Shown piece by piece: positions 820 to 27,910 of a stretch of 64,000 nucleotides of DNA. The stretch's first letter is position 1. Each line of letters begins with the position of its first letter. The position numbers and the translations under genes are program-made. Under the pieces are notes generated by a model, which searched no databases, was not told where the DNA came from, and saw nothing but the letters and a program-made list of their open reading frames with translations. This DNA comes from Pelomyxa schiedti (lineage: Eukaryota; Protista; Evosea): positions 37,369-101,368 of the forward strand of contig JAHLWZ010000596.1 in assembly GCA_020536535.1 (NCBI GenBank), in the 5' to 3' direction.

Positions 820-2406
820 TTAGCAAGAGCCCGTGTGTGCCCAATCCTTCATCAGCATATCAAGTGTTGCAATAAGATTTCTCAAACCTAAAGCAAATGG
901 TTGAGTGAAGTTAATGTTGTTGGTTGCATTACCACGCAGAACATCATCGTCACACACTTCCCCGGGTTTAAGTATATAAGTCTTGGCAAAATCTATTATT
1001 CGGGCATCTCCTTTGGGAGAATCACTGTCACTGTCATAGATCTTTGATTTTGGAAGTTAGTACATAAAGGTTACCTTTACAATAAATCCCAAAGATGGTT
1101 TACCGCCAACATGGAAACGGAGTACATCCTATAGTATGGAGAATCCTCAAGGCGCTTTGCAAGTGTTTTGAACTTCTCTATAAAAAGTGGCAACAAATCT
1201 AGCCTACGTGTGGTGCCGTTTTCAAAAAACTCTCCAAGACGATCCTGCTCAATATTAAGAAAATTATGTGAATTGCTTGGTATCCAGGTTACCTTGAGCT
1301 GTTCCATTGGGAGAACCCTGCCCACATATTTGTCCTGAAATCGGTAGGTGCTGGAAGCAGGCAAAAAGACCTGATTAAAATGGGTGAGCAGTAAGACTAG
1401 AATTCTGCTTGTGTACCAACATTCCACATATGCGGAAAGCCAGTGTAGAAGATGTAGAGTTGGCGCATTTGGCAATTTGCCTTTCCCTTTTTTCAAGAGA
1501 ACACTCGTCTCCATGCTGTCTTGTCCCTGCATAAGTTTAGTTAATTCTTTCACTTTTTCAATTAACGGCGAACCTAATTTTATATCTAATATTGAGGGGT
1601 GCTTATAGGCACTTGTAAGATCTGGATGTCACAAGTTACGAGAAAAAAAGGAATGCATCCAAAATAAAAAACCTTGAATGACCAGGAACGACTGAGGAAC
1701 TGAAACGAAGCAGCATAATTAGAAGTCAATAATCACAACTTGCAAACCTTCAATATTGCGGGGAGCATGGTGACTCTGCAATTCATCAGGACTTGGTGAA
1801 CTGGGAGAAGGGTGCGCGCTGGCCTCCGCATCGGGTAGTGATTGGGAACCGCAGATTGATGGTGATGTAGTAGTGGTAGGAATTTGTGTAGATGTTGATG
1901 TTGTAATAGAGGGCGAACTTTTCTCTATTGAGCTTGGAGGTACATTTGAATGAGACAGTGAATCGCTATCACTTGTTGCATCAACAGAGGCTCCAGACGA
2001 GGGCTTGTGCTTGCGACTCCAGATTAGGGACACTGAGGAGCCAGGGTTTTCAGGCAACAGAGACTTGTCCACAACCAGTGTGCCATAGCATTTTGGTACA
2101 GCAGGAATCATCTGAGAGTGCAGCTGAATGTGCTCATATATCCCCCGTTCTCTCGTGTTGAGAGGCTTGAAAATCCTACCATCCATAAGACATGTGAATA
2201 GAGAATTCTTAAAATACACAACACACAAAAAAAAAAAAAAAAAAAAAAAATAAATAAATAAAAAATAATGGGGGAAAAAAATAGTAGAAGACAAAGAACC
2301 AAAATGCCCATTCGTTCTATTACATTCCCGGGCTGGATAATATTTCAGTGTGGCCAGCCACTTGATACTGAAAAGCCCTCACAGGGAGTGCTATATTCGC
2401 CTCCAT
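820..2406 (-). CDS. Inositol polyphosphate kinase, IPK superfamily (IPMK/IP6K-like), multi-exon
   Basis: Spliced product has YQVAGH in exon 1, [29 protein letters not shown] (PxxxDxKxG signature), SVSMLAV, RIIDFAK and DDDVLRGLRNLI. Stop TAA at 820-822. Confidence 0.88.
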
Positions 2407-20650: not shown

Positions 20651-20811
20651 AGTGCATTTGGAGCGGTGGTGCATTTGGAGAGTGGTTGCAGTTTGGTAGC
20701 ATTTGGAGCGGCGCATTTGGGTGCATTTGGGAGCAGCAAGGCGCATTTGGGAGCATTTGGGGGAGCAAAGAGTGGGTGGTTTGGGAGCAAGCATTTTGGG
20801 AGCATCTGGGT
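20651..20811. repeat. Irregular cluster of GCATTTGG motifs (about 7 exact and 2 variant copies)
   Basis: Seen directly in non-coding DNA. Confidence 0.8.
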
Positions 20812-21201: not shown

Positions 21202-24200
21202 TTAGGACAACAGTGCTGCATGGGCAGAAATTGATTCATAGAACATCTCCTCAAGGACTGAGGAAGTTTCAATGGTGAGTCGCAGGTCATCAGAGTCCAC
21301 AAGTGCCACGTAGCCCTCGTGCCTGCGACGCACTGCGTAGCCCTCACTGTTGGATGTGATGCATGAGAAGTCAGTGGGCAAGAGTGACATGTATGCTGAA
21401 ACAAAGGCCTCATAGTTCTGGGGTGGAACAGCAGCTTGCGGAGGAGGTGTGGGTGAAGTTGTTGTGGTTGAGGATGTTGATGAATCATTGGACTTGGGCT
21501 GCTGGAGAGTGCTGCGTTGTGGGGATACACGGGAGAGCTCCGCGGGAGAGAGGAAGCGGAGAGGGAGAAGCTCGTGGGCACAATGAAGTGGGAGGGAGGT
21601 GAGGGTGCCTCCAGAGGGTGTGGTGTCGGATTTCATTTGAGTCATTGCCACGAGAGAAAAGTGCATGTATCTTGTATTTGGAGTGAAATCAGTTGGTCAT
21701 TGTTTCATTTAGTGGAGATACACTTACGTGTATAAGATGGGCAGTGGCGTTTTTATGCACTCATTTGGTGGGTAAAGAAGGGGTAAATACAACCCGGCCA
21801 AACCCCAGAATGACTAAGAAAGCTTTAACCGAAAATAAATAACTTGGCGGAGTTACCTTCTTGGAATAAATAATAATTGGCCTGGTTTTTTTTTAGGGAC
21901 TAAAGGTTAGCTGGGTTTGACTTGGTTTTTCCTCTACCTTCTCAATACATTTGCAAGTAGGAAAATATGATAATCACCAAGGTAATGCCTTGGATCACTG
22001 ATGCACTCGGTATCAAACATCCGAGTTCTTTCAATCTCTGCAGCAGCAATTTCCACACCATTAGCCTGTCTAAGAAATAAGTTGTTGCACATAGACTCTG
22101 CTATATTTGCACACAGTATTTGCTCACTTGCATAGCGTTCTGACAATTCTTTTTGGTATACTGGATGCTTTGCAAGAACCTGCAGGGAGTTTCTCAGAAT
22201 GTGGGTGGAGTCGACTACTCTCCATAAAGCCAGAGAAGCAGCATGACAGAGGCAATTTCCATCCCCTTCACTTAAACATTAGTTTTAACAGTTAAGAGTC
22301 CTGGCCCATTACCTAAGGTACGATAAATTACGTATTGTGGCAAAAAGTCGTCAGTTGGTATATTTTCACGTAATTCTGCCGTGAAAGCTTTATCAATTAT
22401 TCGATCTTGCACCATGACGCCTTCACGAGATTTGTCAGATTCCTTTGTTCTTACAATCCCAAAGCCTTTTGCCTTGAGAGCTTGATTTCAATCAGAAGAA
22501 AGCCAAGCCAACAAGCCAGAATGCTAAAAACTAACCTGGGAATAGTACTTTAGCCTCAGGTGATGCGAGCATGACAGTGCTGACATCACCCCTCACCGCT
22601 GCCGCCACTTCGTCACTGGCATCCTCCACAGTTATGGGAATGTTGTGAAGTGCCTTCTGCTCCTCAATTTCGCTCTGCTTCATTGACAACTCCATGGCAG
22701 AGTCGATTTCTAGTACGTTCGAGTTGTAATTTTTTAACATTTTGCGTTGCGTGCTGCCGTACGTGTTTGGTCTTCTCTGGACGCCAACAACGCTCGTTGT
22801 AATTCGTCGTCCTCGAGGGACGCCAGCGATGCCGCTAAAACACTGGCCAAATCCATAGATGATGTTTCAAAAAACTTTTGGCTTGGTTTAGGCAGTATTT
22901 TATTATTTAAAACTTACGAGGGATAACTGGTGGGGGCTTTTTGGGTGCTGTGGAAGGTGAATCGGGGGTGAACGAGGATTTGTTGTGGATTGAGTCTTTG
23001 GGGAGCCCGGGGGCTTCTTTGTGTGGTGGGTGATGTTGTTGTGGGGAAGCTGTGGGTGCGGACTGAAATTTGGTTGGTGGGGGAGGGGATGGTCTGTTGA
23101 GTGCAGGGTGGTGCGTGGATTCGGTGCCGTGGGTTTCAGGGAGTGTTGGGGAAGTTTTGGTGGAGTGGAATGTTTGTGGAGTGGCCGGGGATGGCGATGG
23201 CGATGGTGAAGATAACTTAGATGGTGGGGGCGGAGGTTGCTTTACTGGAGCTCCGGGTGCTCTCGTTGTTGGACTGGTTGACGTCGAAGCTGTTGTTGTT
23301 GTTGACGAACTTGCTGGGGTGCTACCGAGGGGACGCTGTGATTCTTTGGGTGTCGGTGGTGTAGCGTACGAGTGGGGGGATGGGTGGTTCGCAGGTGGAG
23401 CCGCATGGGAATGTGGCTGTGGCGGTGTGGGTTGTGCCGGTGGAAGAGGAGGTGGTGGAGTAGACCCAGAGGAAGATAATGAGCTGCTTGATAGATCATC
23501 GGCTTCCACCTCATTACCGCCCTCATGGGTTCCGCCAACACGGTTCCCAATTTTGTGCGCTTGTTGAATGGCAGCCTTTCTTGCTTTGGAAGCTTTGTGG
23601 GCAGTACTACGGGCTGCTTTATTGAGGAATTTAACAGCACTCGCTTTGCTTGGAATGTGTGAAGTGGGAGAATCGGAAAGCTCTGAAGAGTCATCAGAGG
23701 AGGAAGGGTCAGCAGCAAGGTTATCAGTTGAAACATCTAACCCCTTGTAAAGTGAGTGACATCTGGAAATTACTCACGATATTGACCTTAAATAGCATAG
23801 TAAAGTGCTCAAGCATGAAGGTCATAAGCTCATTTGCATAGTTGGAATCTTCCAGCATTACAGAAATATCACCTCCAGCAGGTCGGAGAATGTTGGGTCC
23901 AAAGACTTCGTTGAAGGTTATTTATTTTTTAATGCACAACAAAATACCAATTGCAAGGTTGGCTGCTTTCATTTTATTCTCATTTGAATGAGAAGCCACT
24001 CTTGTGAGGAAAGAAACTAAATACTTCAACAGTATGAGGTTTTGCCTAGTGTGCCAGGTTGGAGCTTCAAGTTTCATAAAGAATAGTACGCACTTGGGAA
24101 TGAACTGAAAAACTTGCCGAATTTTGTTTGCTTTGAGCTCAACATCAGGCACAGCTGGGGAAAGTGAGAATTATAATCTACAGTATAATGGAGTAAACCT

Positions 24201-24702
24201 ATAGCTGCAATAAACATATCGTACTGCAAAGTGTTGGTTCATTAAAATGAAGAAGCTTGCTTACCATATCAAACGTCAGTAGGGCTTCAGGAAGTTCCCT
24301 TCGAATATTTAGAGGGGTTTTCGCATTTTTATTGAAGCCAACCTAAACCATAATTTAAGTAGCCCAGCAACAGCATGAGGGTCACAAGGCGCCAGAGCTG
24401 ACAGGTCGGGGGTCTCCCCTCTGTCATAACGCGCTTTCATATCTAAGACCAAATTTTGATTGCCACTCTGCCGAAACAGCCCCTCCAACTGGGGGAAAGG
24501 GAAAAAAAAAGATGGGGTTTAGAAACGTAAGGAGTAACAAGGGGTAACATACTTCCAGGAAATTTTTGCCTGGCGTTTCCAAGTATTCTACACACTGGCT
24601 TACAATTGGAGGTATGGCATTGTTGGCTTTCAAGGGGCGGCCAAAGACAAGGTTTTTGTGCTTCTTCGACGTTCTCAAAGAAGAAGACGCCGACGAACTC
24701 AT
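21202..24702 (-). CDS. RhoGAP - Pro/Ser/Thr-rich linker - UIM(s) - A20/OTUD7-type OTU deubiquitinase fusion
   Basis: RhoGAP: VFGRPL..IPPIVSQCVEYL, EGLFRQSG, DPHAVAGLLKLWFRELPE, NKMKAANLAIVFGPNIL. UIM: EDDELQRALLASRED. OTU: RTLGDGNCLCHAASLALW, HIFLLANVLRRPIIIYS, AGLYLPLLYPPNECIKTPLPILY, MHFSLV. Confidence 0.82.
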
Positions 24703-25883
24703 CTTACTTTGCGCCCAGCTTAAATAGAGTCGTTACTGGTCAGCACCACCCACTCACTCTTTTTACGTTTCTCTTTTTCCTTGTGGCCATCAATTCGAGA
24801 TCTGCTGTACAACTGAGGGCTCCCATTCGCTCAGGGAAACCACTGTCAATGCGAAAGCATGGCACGTGTGCCGACAAAGCAAAATCTGCTTGACACGTGA
24901 CATTCGATCCCAAAACAGAAGACGCTACGAAATGGTTGTTTGATTTCACTAAAAAAAAAGAATGTACGGGGGGCGGCCACGTGTGTCGTGGTGGGAATGG
25001 GCCAAGGGGATGGTGTGGGGAGGACTAGATTTCTTCACTCTTTTGTGCGTTAGATCTTGTTGTATATACTCACGCTGACTCTTTTTTTCCCCCCCCACTA
25101 GCTTCCAGACTTTGATTGGTGTATGCAACTGACTTATGCCATGCCATGCCTTTAACGCATTTTAGCCACTTTCGTCTGGCACTATAGATAACGTGCGAAA
25201 AGTTGGAGGAGGCACGGGAGGAACAGGGCCAAATTCTAGAGGACCTGGGCCAGGAAAAAAACCAATGGGGAGAATTAACAGTGCTAGTATGTTGACACTC
25301 ACGTTTGGGGTGCTTATGCAATTTTACCATCTTAGGTGCTATGGACTGCTCAATGGCTGGGGGAGGATGAGGGCGTAGATAGACACGAAGCCTTGTAAAG
25401 TAAATGTATGCGTACATTACCTTTTTAAAGTACCATTTTCTGAATTCTCCTTACCAAACACACAGTTTGACTTCCGCTTCGTGTCTCGCCGTCCGTCTGT
25501 GGTGATAAAGTGCATGGAGGTGATCCCATAACACGTCAATCCACTTGTGGGCTGTGTTCTTGGGTGAATGTGCACCACATCCCCACATAATGCCAAAAGT
25601 TTTCCTTAAATTTCTGGTGAAAAAAAATGCTTTTCTTTCTCTTCCTCCATTGTATAAAAAGTTCTGTTCTGAACGAAAAAAAAAAGTGGTATACTTCTCG
25701 ATTTTGCGTGTCATCCTTGCGCAGGGGCCATGCTAATCTTCTCTGTATTGTTCCAATTTTAACGGATGACCTGGTTTCCCAGGCTCCAAAGAAAAACCAC
25801 TCCTTTTGGGCTTTTTAAGGTCGAAAAAGTCTGTCCACAAAAATTATGGGTTCGGGAAAAACCGGAAAGTCCTGTTTCGCCAA

Positions 25884-27910
25884 ATGGGAGCCACAAACGG
25901 CAAGGGTGCTTCTGTGGGTGGAGGGGCTGACTATGACGACTATGATGAACGGGTCTTCTATGTGTCGGGCAAGAAGAACCCCTTGTACTACGTTTCCGTG
26001 CGCGATGCCAGCAACTCACTGAGCGGGCCCATTGATATGTTCGAGGATGTTCACCCAACAGGCGACAGGGCCGCCCTATCTTCGCTCCGAGAGTACCTCG
26101 AGGCCCACGGCTCCTCGTCCTCGTCGTCATCCTCATCCTCCTCCTCCTCTTCCGAGTGCCGTACGGTTAAGAGACTGACACAAGCAGTTGTCAAGTCGTG
26201 CCCGACGCCCGCAGATTGCTACTGCGTGATGGCCGAGTGGGCGACGCCCGTGGTGCTGGCGGCCAAGGCGCGGCGGGCCGACCTCGTGGAGTGCATGGGC
26301 GCGGTGGTCGCCGGCCGCTTCGGCGCCGCCACCGCGCGCGCCATCTTCCGCCACGGCGGCGGGCCGGGCGGCGAGACTGCGCTCAAGATCGCGGCGCACC
26401 GCGGGGACGCGGACACCGCGAGGGCCCTGCTGAGATACGGGGGGTTCGGCGCGGACTCTGCCGCGGCCGTGGAGGTGGCCGCGGGCGAGGGCAGGGTGGA
26501 GGTCCTGCGGTGCCTGCTGGAGCGCGGGGGGAAGGCGCCCGTGGGCGCGTTCTACATGGTGTGCGAGGCGCTGGACAGGAGGACCGAGGGGGCCAAGGAG
26601 TGCCTGGCGGTGCTGGCCAGGGCCGAGCCGGCCTGCCTCCCTGCCGCGCTGCTGTACTCTTGTGGGCTGCCGGAGCTGTATGCCCTGGATTCCGTGGTGC
26701 AGCTGGGCGTGCCTTTGAGTGACTTGGAGCCGCCGGGATCAACTTGCAAGGTTGGAAGCAAGGAGCTGGAGGCTCTGTGCAAGTCCAACGCCAAGTGGGT
26801 GCACCGGAAAATCGAAATCGTCATTGGACTCGGTGCGGACGTGACTTCTGAGGGCTGTATGAGACTCCTTCTCTCCGCTATTGCTAACTGTGCTTCTGAC
26901 GACTGGGCGACTGCTGCCGAATTTCTTATGGGTAAGATGGGACTTGGTGGGGAATTCTCTGTCGCGGTACTAAAATCCAAGGCGGCAACCGCCTTGGAGT
27001 ACGCATTCCTCCAAGGATTCCCGAGTTGCGCTTTGGGGTGGCTAATATCCAGAGGGGCAAAGGTAACCTCATTTTGTATTATCAGAGCTGTCGAACAAAT
27101 CACTGAAGACACACTCGACGTGTTAATAAAACAAGGGCATATTGATGTCAATTCATCTGTACCTTCAAAAGCATGGGGAGAGTGCTGTCTGCTGCGATAC
27201 GCTTTCCTAGCTAACCGACCCAAATCTGCTCTCCTATTGGTTGCAAATGGTGCAACTCTACCAGACCCACTTCCTAGTGAAAATGACTGGGTACCAGCCA
27301 CATGTGCCCTTCTTTGTGCTAGTGGCAAGTATGCAGCAAGCACATTCCCTACTTTCCTACAAACTTTTCCCCGAGCTGTTAACAGCCTCACCAAATCCCT
27401 CATTTCAGATTGGTACATCACCCCGCTCTTCATCGCCTCGGTTCAAGGTGTTTCAACCAATGTGAAGACACTCTTGAAATGCAGAGCTGATACCAACTTT
27501 GCGTGGAGCGAAAGGCCGAACCTCACAGCCCTGACTGGAATTCTTAAAGACTTCCACAAAATCAAGCATGTTCCCATTCTGGAGCTATTACTGCACTCTG
27601 GGGCCAAACTCCACGACGTCAGCGTACCCGGTGCCGAGGAATTATGGGCTTCCCTGGAAACAAAGCACCTCTTTCAGGTACCCTTCTGTTTTATAAACAC
27701 TTGAACGAGAAAGAACTAACACCAATCAAAATGAAGTTTTATGCATGGTACCGCGTTGCAATTACAGTGTGTGTGAGCAGGACAAAGCGTTGTGGTGGAT
27801 CATGTTGTCTGGCGGTGTTAACGGAAGAAATGGTGCTTTGTGTGATCAAAATGCTGCAAAGAGATAGTGCTGGCTGGGATTGTAAAACTACTTTTCTTGT
27901 ACTTCAATAG
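25884..27910 (+). CDS. Ankyrin-repeat protein
   Basis: ETALKIAAHRGDADTARALLRYG, AAGEGRVEVLRCLLERG and TPLFIASVQG..NVKTLLKCRADTN. One large exon plus a short terminal exon. Confidence 0.8.

What the first reader, a model, noticed from the sequence alone, without database searches (positions are those of the whole stretch)
21202..24702. RhoGAP-UIM-A20-type OTU deubiquitinase in one polypeptide
Seen: the OTU domain is split over exons too small for the ORF track. It includes RTLGDGNCLCHAAS (catalytic Cys codon at 22252-22254), HIFLLANVLRRPIII, GLYLPL and MHFSLV (His codon at 21661-21663). A canonical UIM EDDELQRALLASRED lies at about 22771-22814, followed by a second UIM-like IDSAMELSMKQ. The N-terminal RhoGAP keeps its arginine finger (GLFRQSG). 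Established: these motifs define the A20/Cezanne/TRABID/VCPIP1 OTU subfamily, and Rho/Rac levels and signalling are ubiquitin-controlled. Inference: a bifunctional enzyme that couples Rho-family inactivation to ubiquitin-chain removal. I do not recognise this architecture from characterised proteins.
Basis: partly seen in the sequence, partly recalled or inferred. Interest (0 to 1): 0.8.

Follow-up and report, generated by a model that had tools for sequence, protein, structure and literature searches.

The report
RhoGAP fused to A20-like deubiquitinase
In the anaerobic amoeba Pelomyxa schiedti, one annotated gene joins an intact Rho-GTPase "off-switch" domain, through a long floppy linker and two ubiquitin-binding motifs, to an intact A20/Cezanne-type ubiquitin-removing protease; I found this combination nowhere else, and no RNA evidence yet shows the two halves are made as one protein.

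Summary
The locus (window 24702-21202, minus strand) lies in the Pelomyxa schiedti genome. It is already in GenBank as one 915-aa protein, auto-named "Rho GTPase-activating protein 22" (P0070). P0070 maps exactly onto 16 exons with 15 GT-AG introns.

- **RhoGAP (residues 31-180):** 148 bits in Pfam, with R56, K95 and N168 intact.
- **Linker:** about 275 residues, rich in Pro, Ser and Thr.
- **UIMs:** a motif-perfect UIM and a second UIM-like core, both below the Pfam cut-off.
- **OTU:** an A20-like domain by sequence and predicted fold. The only solved relatives by sequence are Cezanne, A20, TRABID and VCPIP1. The triad is D602/C633/H763. Modelled ubiquitin places Gly75/76 on Cys/His.

The join itself is not proven. 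A TAA at 22907 sits where a RhoGAP-only paralogue stops. An in-frame ATG lies 48 nt downstream. Seven in-frame GT-AG pairs could bridge the gap, and I obtained no RNA evidence. I put the fusion at about 0.6.

None of the 120 best database relatives or 80 metagenomic OTU loci carries a RhoGAP. The scan's earlier notes do not hold this architecture, but they do hold other RhoGAP-linker-X fusions in this genome. This is a new domain combination of known parts and moderately interesting.

The parts
21202..24702 (-). Whole gene as annotated in GenBank (P0070, 915 aa). It has 16 exons: 24702-24553, 24488-24343, 24298-24265, 24223-24199, 24154-24094, 24045-23948, 23905-23787, 23743-22914, 22842-22763, 22709-22536, 22480-22313, 22265-22115, 22069-21938, 21881-21857, 21813-21728, 21670-21205. 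The stop TAA is at 21204-21202.
   Evidence: Exact codon-by-codon mapping of P0070 onto the window, with 15 GT-AG introns of 41-71 nt. P0070's longest contig is 101368 bases, which is this contig.
23880..24612 (-). RhoGAP domain, residues 31-180, spread over exons 1-7. Arg finger R56 is at 24473-24471, K95 at 24356-24354 and N168 at 23960-23958.
   Evidence: Pfam PF00620 at 148.5 bits covering 1-146 of 148 positions. PDB sequence matches to N-chimaerin (2.1e-29) and p50RhoGAP (6.3e-29), with the finger Arg and the NLA(I/V)VFGPN Asn aligned. Codons.
24199..24223 (-). 25-nt mini-exon encoding YDMFIAAI inside the RhoGAP domain.
   Evidence: Part of P0070. It aligns to chimaerin YPKFIESA. The same peptide is present in the C761 paralogue.
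22916..23743 (-). Linker, residues 212-487: 20% Pro, 18% Ser, 10% Thr, with PPPP, PPPPP, PPPP and PPP runs. It opens with a conserved basic stretch at about residues 243-280.
   Evidence: Composition. No Pfam hit. It aligns end to end with the tail of the RhoGAP-only paralogue.
22843..22913 (-). The intron that makes the fusion in the GenBank model (71 nt, gtttta..ggccag). It contains the in-frame TAA (22909-22907), an AATAAA just after it, and the in-frame ATG at 22856-22854.
   Evidence: Six other in-frame GT-AG pairs exist, for example 22917-22835 (gtaagt..ttttag) and 22927-22875 (53 nt).
22770..22814 (-). UIM 1, EDDELQRALLASRED, residues 498-512.
   Evidence: Matches the acidic-Phi-xx-A-xxx-S-xx-acidic UIM consensus. 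Pfam UIM scores 15.5 bits, E 0.016, below the 21-bit cut-off.
22675..22707 (-). UIM-like motif 2, IDSAMELSMKQ, residues 516-526. Its core is I-xx-A-xxx-S, with the Ala 14 residues after that of UIM 1.
   Evidence: Read from the sequence only. No Pfam hit.
21550..22430 (-). A20-like OTU protease core, residues about 590-800. D602 is at 22394-22392, catalytic C633 at 22254-22252 and H763 at 21663-21661.
   Evidence: Pfam OTU at 44.6 bits. PDB sequence hits only to OTUD7B (1.4e-22), A20 (4e-14), TRABID (1e-12) and VCPIP1 (1.6e-3), with D602 aligned to A20 Asp70. AlphaFold model pLDDT 77.5, above 90 in the core. Top Foldseek hits are Cezanne, A20 and TRABID. In the ubiquitin docking model, Gly75/76 touch C633 and H763.
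21205..21549 (-). C-terminal tail, residues 801-915: a Ser/Thr/Pro-rich insert followed by about 70 residues that look folded.
   Evidence: No Pfam family. Its resemblance to the C-terminal strands of the A20 OTU domain is from memory and was not tested.

Best explanation
A native, intron-rich Pelomyxa schiedti gene encodes one multidomain protein of about 915 aa.

From N to C terminus it carries:
- a catalytically competent RhoGAP;
- a disordered Pro/Ser/Thr-rich linker of about 275 residues with polyproline runs;
- a UIM plus a UIM-like motif on what is probably one helix;
- an A20-like OTU cysteine protease.

Likely mechanism: the RhoGAP supplies its arginine finger to GTP-bound Rho/Rac and switches it off. 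The UIMs hold ubiquitin or ubiquitin chains next to the OTU domain, which cuts the isopeptide bond using Cys633, His763 and Asp602.

The gene looks like a lineage-specific join of a complete RhoGAP-plus-tail gene to a downstream UIM-OTU gene. The old stop codon and the old start codon are now removed within one short intron.

Shown here: the domain identities, the intact catalytic residues, the A20-type fold, a canonical modelled ubiquitin pose, and that GenBank annotates a single product.

Inferred: that the fused mRNA is really made, and that the two activities act on the same site or substrate.
For: - **Annotation:** P0070, 'Rho GTPase-activating protein 22 [Pelomyxa schiedti]', carries PF00620 and PF02338. 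It maps exactly onto the window with 15 GT-AG introns. The annotators used Augustus refined by PASA/EVM with their own RNA-seq.
- **Signs of transcript guidance:** the model holds two 25-nt exons and two stop-free in-frame introns. One of those introns is confirmed by stop codons at the same place in the paralogue. The fusing intron uses the weak donor gtttta rather than gtaagt 4 nt upstream. An ab initio predictor would be unlikely to choose that, so it hints at transcript guidance. This is my inference.
- **Spacing:** only 48 nt separate TAA 22907 from ATG 22856, and that stretch has intron-like GC of 0.31 against 0.49 for exons.
- **RhoGAP:** 1e-29 to chimaerin and p50RhoGAP, with R56, K95 and N168 kept.
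- **OTU:** only A20-like solved relatives by sequence and these lead the fold search. D602, C633 and H763 align to A20 D70, C103 and H256.
- **Ubiquitin docking:** Complex prediction with the amoeba's own ubiquitin scored 0.66 against a best control of 0.00. That mark was reached by 51 of 78 solved complexes and 2 of 108 mismatched pairs. The runs agree in at least 81% of contacts and partner pLDDT is at least 85. Ubiquitin residues 70-76 sit on C633 and H763.
- **Context:** earlier notes of this scan report other RhoGAP-linker-X fusions in this genome, one with spliced-transcript support (not checked by me).
Against: - **No RNA evidence:** the one RNA run held about 10% of the sampled words but laid nothing. 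The other three runs gave unspliced contigs colinear with the genome (no joints), evidently DNA although their kind is not on record.
- **Homologous stop:** the RhoGAP ORF ends at TAA 22907. The close paralogue on contig C761 has the same RhoGAP and Pro-rich tail, aligns end to end, and stops 3 codons after the same PPP(V)IP motif with no UIM or OTU behind it. A complete RhoGAP-only product is therefore the ancestral state and may still be made.
- **Signals for two genes:** AATAAA follows that stop directly. An AT-rich TATA-like stretch and an in-frame ATG (MDLASVLAASLASLEDDELQ...) follow.
- **Bridging is uninformative:** seven in-frame GT-AG pairs can bridge the gap, so an in-frame intron is expected by chance.
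- **No fused orthologue:** none found anywhere.
- **The docking pass may reflect memory** of the solved A20-ubiquitin and Cezanne-ubiquitin complexes.
Confidence: 0.6

Rival explanations
1. These are two separate neighbouring genes that the automatic annotation merged. The first is a RhoGAP with a Pro-rich tail of about 510 aa, ending ...PPVIPRKF at TAA 22907. The second is a UIM-OTU deubiquitinase of about 430 aa, starting at ATG 22856. Their transcripts would abut or overlap, as happens in compact amoebal genomes.
For: - The stop lies at the position homologous to the stop of the RhoGAP-only paralogue, and the two tails align end to end.
- AATAAA follows the stop directly, and similar signals follow three other stops in this genome.
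- There is an in-frame ATG with an AT-rich stretch upstream.
- Both halves have stand-alone paralogues: the OTU-only P0001 of 319 aa, and the C761 RhoGAP.
- In-frame GT-AG bridges are expected by chance; seven are present.
- No fused orthologue exists and no RNA support was obtained.
Against: - A 48-nt gap would have to hold both a 3' end and a promoter. The genome averages about 2.6 kb per gene: 52.4 Mb and 19,876 genes.
- The GenBank pipeline had transcript data and kept one gene. It chose a junction that an ab initio scorer would not favour.
- RhoGAP-linker-X fusions recur in this genome according to earlier notes.
Confidence: 0.33
2. Both products are made. The fusing intron is sometimes retained or alternatively spliced, giving a RhoGAP-only protein that stops at 22907 as well as the RhoGAP-UIM-OTU fusion. 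This is a sub-case of the best explanation.
For: - The retained intron has an immediate in-frame TAA at the ancestral stop position.
- It is the longest intron of the gene and uses weak splice sites.
- Several competing in-frame junctions exist.
Against: Nothing speaks for or against it directly, because no RNA data could be laid on the locus.
Confidence: 0.2
3. One or both catalytic domains are inactive scaffolds, so the protein is not a bifunctional enzyme.
For: - Dead RhoGAP domains are reported elsewhere in this genome by earlier notes (not checked by me).
- The Pelomyxa OTUs sit on long branches in the tree.
Against: - RhoGAP R56, K95 and N168 are all present.
- The OTU triad D602, C633 and H763 is present.
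- All 19 invariant columns of the 43-sequence OTU alignment are kept.
- Ubiquitin's C-terminus is modelled at the active site.
Confidence: 0.07

Closest known systems
A20-like OTU deubiquitinases: OTUD7B/Cezanne, TNFAIP3/A20, ZRANB1/TRABID, VCPIP1
   Same: These are the only solved structures hit by sequence (1.4e-22 to 1.6e-3) and the best hits by fold. The GDGNC Cys loop, LANVLRRPI, YLPL and HF His motifs are the same. The acidic residue lies upstream of the Cys, as with A20 Asp70. A ubiquitin-binding element sits N-terminal to the OTU, as in Cezanne (UBA) and TRABID (NZF, ankyrin); that comparison is from my own knowledge.
   Different: There is no A20-type zinc finger, UBA or NZF; UIMs take their place. 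A RhoGAP sits at the N terminus. The two Pelomyxa OTUs form their own long branch outside the animal groups (SH-aLRT 97, quick tree only). Identity to animal members is about 30-38%.
UIM-bearing OTU deubiquitinases OTUD1 and OTUD5/DUBA (from my own knowledge, not tested here)
   Same: A UIM next to an OTU domain helps bind ubiquitin chains.
   Different: They belong to a different OTU subfamily, their UIM is C-terminal, and they have no GAP domain. OTUD3 and DUBA match the model only weakly by fold (E about 1e-6).
USP6/TRE17: TBC (Rab-GAP-like) domain plus USP deubiquitinase (from my own knowledge)
   Same: It is the best-known case of a small-GTPase GAP-type domain and a deubiquitinase in one polypeptide.
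   Different: The GAP family differs (TBC, not RhoGAP), the protease fold differs (USP, not OTU), and it is hominoid-specific. It is not a homologue.
Canonical RhoGAPs: p50RhoGAP/ARHGAP1, chimaerins, ARHGAP22 (the GenBank name)
   Same: The full domain is present with the arginine finger, Lys and Asn, at about 1e-29 to the solved structures.
   Different: None of these carries an OTU or a UIM. The ARHGAP22 name is an automatic best-hit label and hides the C-terminal half.
Other RhoGAP-linker-X proteins of Pelomyxa schiedti
   Same: The layout is the same: a RhoGAP-type domain, a long Pro-rich tether, then a C-terminal signalling module.
   Different: In those proteins the RhoGAP is reported as dead and the partner is Ras, a RhoGEF, a kinase or a kinesin. 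Here the GAP is intact and the partner is a deubiquitinase. I did not check those notes.

Membership tests
RhoGAP (PF00620) | Profile match over the whole domain above the curated cut-off | tested here: met
   148.5 bits against a 24.5-bit cut-off, covering positions 1-146 of 148.
RhoGAP (PF00620) | Catalytic arginine finger, plus the conserved Lys and Asn (p50RhoGAP R85, K122, N194) | tested here: met
   R56, K95 and N168 align to the p50RhoGAP and chimaerin residues.
RhoGAP (PF00620) | Stimulates GTP hydrolysis by a Rho-family GTPase | not testable with these tools
   This needs a biochemical assay.
A20-like OTU subfamily (within PF02338) | OTU profile match above the cut-off | tested here: met
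   44.6 bits against 23.3 on P0070. Exon 10 alone gives 22.4 bits.
A20-like OTU subfamily (within PF02338) | Closest to A20, Cezanne, TRABID and VCPIP1 rather than to OTUD, otubain or viral OTUs | tested here: met
   All 12 PDB sequence hits are these four proteins. Foldseek gives about 6e-15 to 3e-13 for Cezanne, A20 and TRABID and 2.9e-7 for VCPIP1, against 1e-6 or worse for other OTUs.
A20-like OTU subfamily (within PF02338) | Catalytic Cys and His, with the acidic residue upstream of the Cys | tested here: met
   C633, H763 and D602 align to A20 C103, H256 and D70. Cys and His are invariant columns of the 43-sequence alignment.
A20-like OTU subfamily (within PF02338) | Accessory domains of the animal members (zf-A20, UBA, NZF/ankyrin) | tested here: not met
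   Pfam finds only RhoGAP and OTU on P0070. The animal relatives carry PF01754, PF28552 or PF00641. These accessory domains do not define the catalytic family.
A20-like OTU subfamily (within PF02338) | Binds ubiquitin with its C-terminus in the active site, and cleaves chains | tested here: inconclusive
   The docking model scored 0.66 against a best control of 0.00, a mark reached by 51 of 78 solved complexes and 2 of 108 mismatched pairs. Ubiquitin G75/G76 touch C633 and H763. This may be memory of solved complexes. Cleavage was not tested.
UIM (PF02809) | Motif acidic(4)-Phi-xx-Ala-xxx-Ser-xx-acidic, and a profile match | tested here: inconclusive
   EDDELQRALLASRED fits every motif position, but Pfam gives 15.5 bits against a 21-bit cut-off. 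The second motif has only the Phi-xx-A-xxx-S core.
Single-chain RhoGAP-OTU fusion | Both domains on one mRNA and one protein | tested here: inconclusive
   It is annotated as one gene. No RNA contig could be laid on it. A stop and an ATG lie between the two halves.

The most novel reading that the evidence does not exclude
A natural single-chain enzyme in which an active RhoGAP and an active A20-type deubiquitinase are tethered together. The same molecule that switches off a Rho/Rac GTPase would also strip ubiquitin from that GTPase, its regulators, or ubiquitin-marked cargo held by the tandem UIMs, for example at phagocytic or endocytic actin sites. That would be a hard-wired link between Rho signalling and ubiquitin editing, and I know of no such link in any characterised protein.
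Probability: 0.25. Interest if true: 0.65.

Novelty: new variant of a known kind. Interest (0 to 1): 0.42.

Why it matters
Rho-family GTPases are known to be controlled by ubiquitination. In studied organisms the GAPs and the deubiquitinases are separate proteins that have to find each other. A natural fusion would be genetic evidence that the two activities belong to one pathway. It would also name a candidate substrate neighbourhood for an A20-type deubiquitinase outside animals. The locus further shows that A20-like OTUs, best known from animal immune signalling, exist as a small family in an anaerobic amoeba. If the join is only an annotation artefact, the value is practical: a GenBank model would need splitting, and its name hides a deubiquitinase.

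Tried and rejected
- **My own gene model:** my first 13-exon model was wrong at three places: a missed 25-nt exon and two in-frame introns. I replaced it with the GenBank model after exact mapping.
- I redid the mapping from coordinates and stored files only.
- **Joined model:** I sent no joined spliced model to any search tool. Exons were searched by reference, and after that the database protein P0070 was used by id.
- **RNA evidence:** The look-up of sequencing runs gave one RNA run with 10% of the words. Read laying laid nothing from it and only unspliced, genome-colinear contigs from the other three.
- **Word search with exon 8:** no candidates.
- **Representative search with exon 10:** only 3 hits, one of them the OTU-only paralogue P0001. 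P0070 itself was not returned.
- **The look-up of encoding contigs:** tried on a neighbouring ORF and on P0001 to read the local annotation. Own-genome records are withheld.
- **ESM Atlas with P0070:** no usable hit.
- **Metagenome scans:** with P0070, no relative. With the OTU alignment, 80 loci, none with a RhoGAP or the UIM stretch by tblastn at E<=1. Many of those contigs are short, so this is weak negative evidence.
- **Literature:** no paper combines RhoGAP and OTU in one protein. The DUB evolution paper did not settle how A20-like OTUs are distributed in Amoebozoa.
- **Promoter and poly(A) comparison of four genes:** not decisive.
- **In-frame GT-AG bridging as evidence for the fusion:** rejected, because seven such pairs exist.
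- **Plus-strand ORFs across the linker** (for example 23070-23567): I read these as antisense artefacts of the Pro-rich low-complexity coding sequence.
Full report
**Source and setting.** The window is G000:C596:37369-101368 of a 52,367,397-base assembly in 5337 contigs. Those figures match the published Pelomyxa schiedti genome: 52.4 Mb, 5337 scaffolds, 19,876 predicted proteins, 7.43 introns per gene and 98.4% GT-AG introns (PMC8887013). Earlier notes of this scan name the same organism. The finding lies on the minus strand of an ordinary region for this genome, with GC about 0.47.

**Checking the observation.** I first built a 13-exon, all-GT-AG model by hand and searched it exon by exon by reference. 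I sent no joined spliced sequence to any search tool. RhoGAP scores over its cut-off on two separate exons (33.1 and 34.1 bits). OTU scores 22.4 bits on the Cys-loop exon alone. UIM scores 15.5 bits against a 21-bit cut-off on the 23-residue exon.

**The gene is already annotated as one protein.** A word search seeded with the OTU region of a distant relative returned P0070. This is 915 aa, carries Pfam RhoGAP and OTU, is named 'Rho GTPase-activating protein 22 [Pelomyxa schiedti]' by NCBI, and has a longest contig of 101368 bases, which is this contig. A script that walks the genome codon by codon and allows only GT-AG jumps reproduces P0070 exactly. It gives 16 exons from 24702 to 21205, 15 introns of 41-71 nt, and a TAA stop.

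The GenBank model differs from mine at four places:
- a 25-nt exon encoding YDMFIAAI;
- a 48-nt in-frame intron inside the RhoGAP;
- a 45-nt in-frame intron inside the OTU;
- the exact fusing junction, 22913-22843 in GenBank against my 22917-22835.

The first two GenBank choices are better than mine. They restore a gap-free alignment to chimaerin and p50RhoGAP. They are also mirrored in a paralogue, where the intron position carries stop codons and the mini-exon peptide is present.

**What the parts are.**
- **RhoGAP:** on P0070 it covers residues 31-180 at 148.5 bits. The best solved relatives are N-chimaerin (2.1e-29) and p50RhoGAP (6.3e-29). The arginine finger R56, K95 and N168 are all in place.
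- **Linker:** residues 212-487 are 20% Pro, 18% Ser and 10% Thr, with four runs of three to five prolines and no family match.
- **UIMs:** residues 498-512 (EDDELQRALLASRED) fit every position of the UIM consensus. Residues 516-526 carry a second Phi-xx-A-xxx-S core, with its Ala 14 residues after the first. Both stay below Pfam's threshold, which is usual for so short a motif, so I call them probable.
- **OTU:** it scores 44.6 bits in Pfam. By sequence, the only solved structures it matches are OTUD7B/Cezanne (1.4e-22), A20 (about 1e-13), TRABID (1.1e-12) and VCPIP1 (1.6e-3), which together make up the A20-like subfamily. D602, C633 and H763 align to A20 Asp70, Cys103 and His256.
- **Predicted fold:** an AlphaFold model built on a 43-sequence alignment has mean pLDDT 77.5, above 90 across the core. 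Foldseek ranks Cezanne, A20 and TRABID first (6e-15 to 3e-13), VCPIP1 at 2.9e-7, and other OTUs at 1e-6 or worse.
- **Ubiquitin docking:** I docked the amoeba's own ubiquitin, taken from a polyubiquitin locus. The score was 0.66 against a best control of 0.00. That mark was reached by 51 of 78 solved complexes and 2 of 108 mismatched pairs. The runs agree in at least 81% of contacts and partner pLDDT is at least 85. The Ile44 patch and residues 70-76 of ubiquitin lie on the OTU, with Gly75/76 touching C633 and H763. Because A20-ubiquitin and Cezanne-ubiquitin complexes are solved, this shows likeness rather than proving binding.

**Is it really one gene?** This is the weak point of the finding.

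Evidence for two genes:
- The linker ORF runs into TAA at 22909-22907.
- AATAAA follows that stop at once.
- An in-frame ATG at 22856 could start a UIM-OTU protein.
- A close RhoGAP paralogue on contig C761 (62-76% identical exons) has the same Pro-rich tail. The tail aligns end to end with ours and stops three codons after the same PPP(V)IP motif. Nothing UIM-like or OTU-like lies downstream of it.
- The OTU half also has a stand-alone paralogue, P0001 (319 aa, contig C627). The two Pelomyxa OTUs are each other's closest relatives (SH-aLRT 97, quick tree).

So both halves existed as complete genes, and the stop at 22907 is the ancestral RhoGAP stop. Seven different in-frame GT-AG pairs could bridge the gap, so the existence of an in-frame intron is no evidence for the fusion.

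RNA data did not help. The single RNA run holds about a tenth of the sampled words but laid no contig. The three other runs gave only unspliced contigs colinear with the genome.

Evidence for the fusion:
- The gap is only 48 nt in a genome that averages about 2.6 kb per gene, and its GC is intron-like (0.31).
- The annotators refined Augustus models with PASA/EVM and their own transcriptome.
- The model shows several features that ab initio prediction rarely produces: two 25-nt exons, two stop-free in-frame introns, and a fusing donor (gtttta) that scores far below the gtaagt four bases upstream when judged against this gene's other 14 donors. That last point is my own reasoning.
- Earlier notes report several RhoGAP-linker-X fusions in this genome, one with spliced transcripts (not checked by me).

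Weighing these, I put a real fused mRNA at about 0.6 and two merged genes at about 0.33. Within the fused case, a RhoGAP-only isoform made by intron retention is a live possibility.

**Is the architecture known elsewhere?**
- Among proteins of 503-1601 aa that share words with this OTU domain, 250 scored E<=1e-3. In the best 120, only P0070 carries a RhoGAP. The rest are OTU plus zf-A20, Cezanne-type, or OTU plus kinase.
- A full HMMER pass of the Cys-loop exon over 1.84 billion cluster representatives found only three hits and no close orthologue.
- Two metagenome scans gave no close relative, and then 80 A20-like OTU loci, none with a RhoGAP or this UIM stretch.
- Full-text searches found no paper describing a RhoGAP-OTU protein.
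- Limits: the word index, the length window, the unseen 130 weaker hits and the short metagenomic contigs all leave room for missed cases.

**Verdict.** The single-polypeptide reading equals the existing GenBank model but remains unproven. The functional coupling is conjecture. The closest known things are the animal A20-like OTUs for the protease and ordinary RhoGAPs for the N terminus. The nearest analogue of a GAP-type domain joined to a deubiquitinase is the unrelated TBC-USP protein USP6, which I cite from my own knowledge. I rate it a new variant of known kinds and of moderate interest.

Noticed in passing
window 25806-27704 (+): An uninterrupted 632-codon ORF (606 aa from the first ATG at 25884) with ankyrin repeats (Ank_2, 3e-12). 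It sits in a block of GC 0.56 against about 0.45 around it. It is unusual for being intronless in a genome with about 7 introns per gene.
   Followed up: partly
L008 (G000:C761) about 4565-2694, minus strand: A close paralogue of the RhoGAP half with the same exon layout and Pro-rich tail, but ending in TGA with no UIM or OTU downstream. It marks the ancestral end of the RhoGAP gene.
   Followed up: yes
L007 (G000:C627) about 1040-2307, plus strand; protein P0001: A stand-alone 319-aa A20-like OTU paralogue without UIMs or a RhoGAP. An eIF5A-like gene lies upstream on the other strand.
   Followed up: partly
window about 23650-23540 (-), P0070 residues about 243-280: A basic stretch just after the RhoGAP domain (SKASAVKFLNKAAR...KIGN) is about 90% identical to the paralogue, more conserved than the GAP domain itself. 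It may be a membrane-binding or partner-binding helix.
   Followed up: no
window 20652-20768: Short degenerate tandem repeats (periods 10, 17 and 30; GCATTTGGGA-like) about 450 nt beyond the gene's stop codon.
   Followed up: no
The subfamily may therefore be much wider than animals, although I did not determine which organisms the contigs come from.
   Followed up: no
P0029, P0043, P0047 (database proteins): Some relatives combine an A20-like OTU with a C-terminal protein kinase domain, which is another unusual OTU fusion.
   Followed up: no
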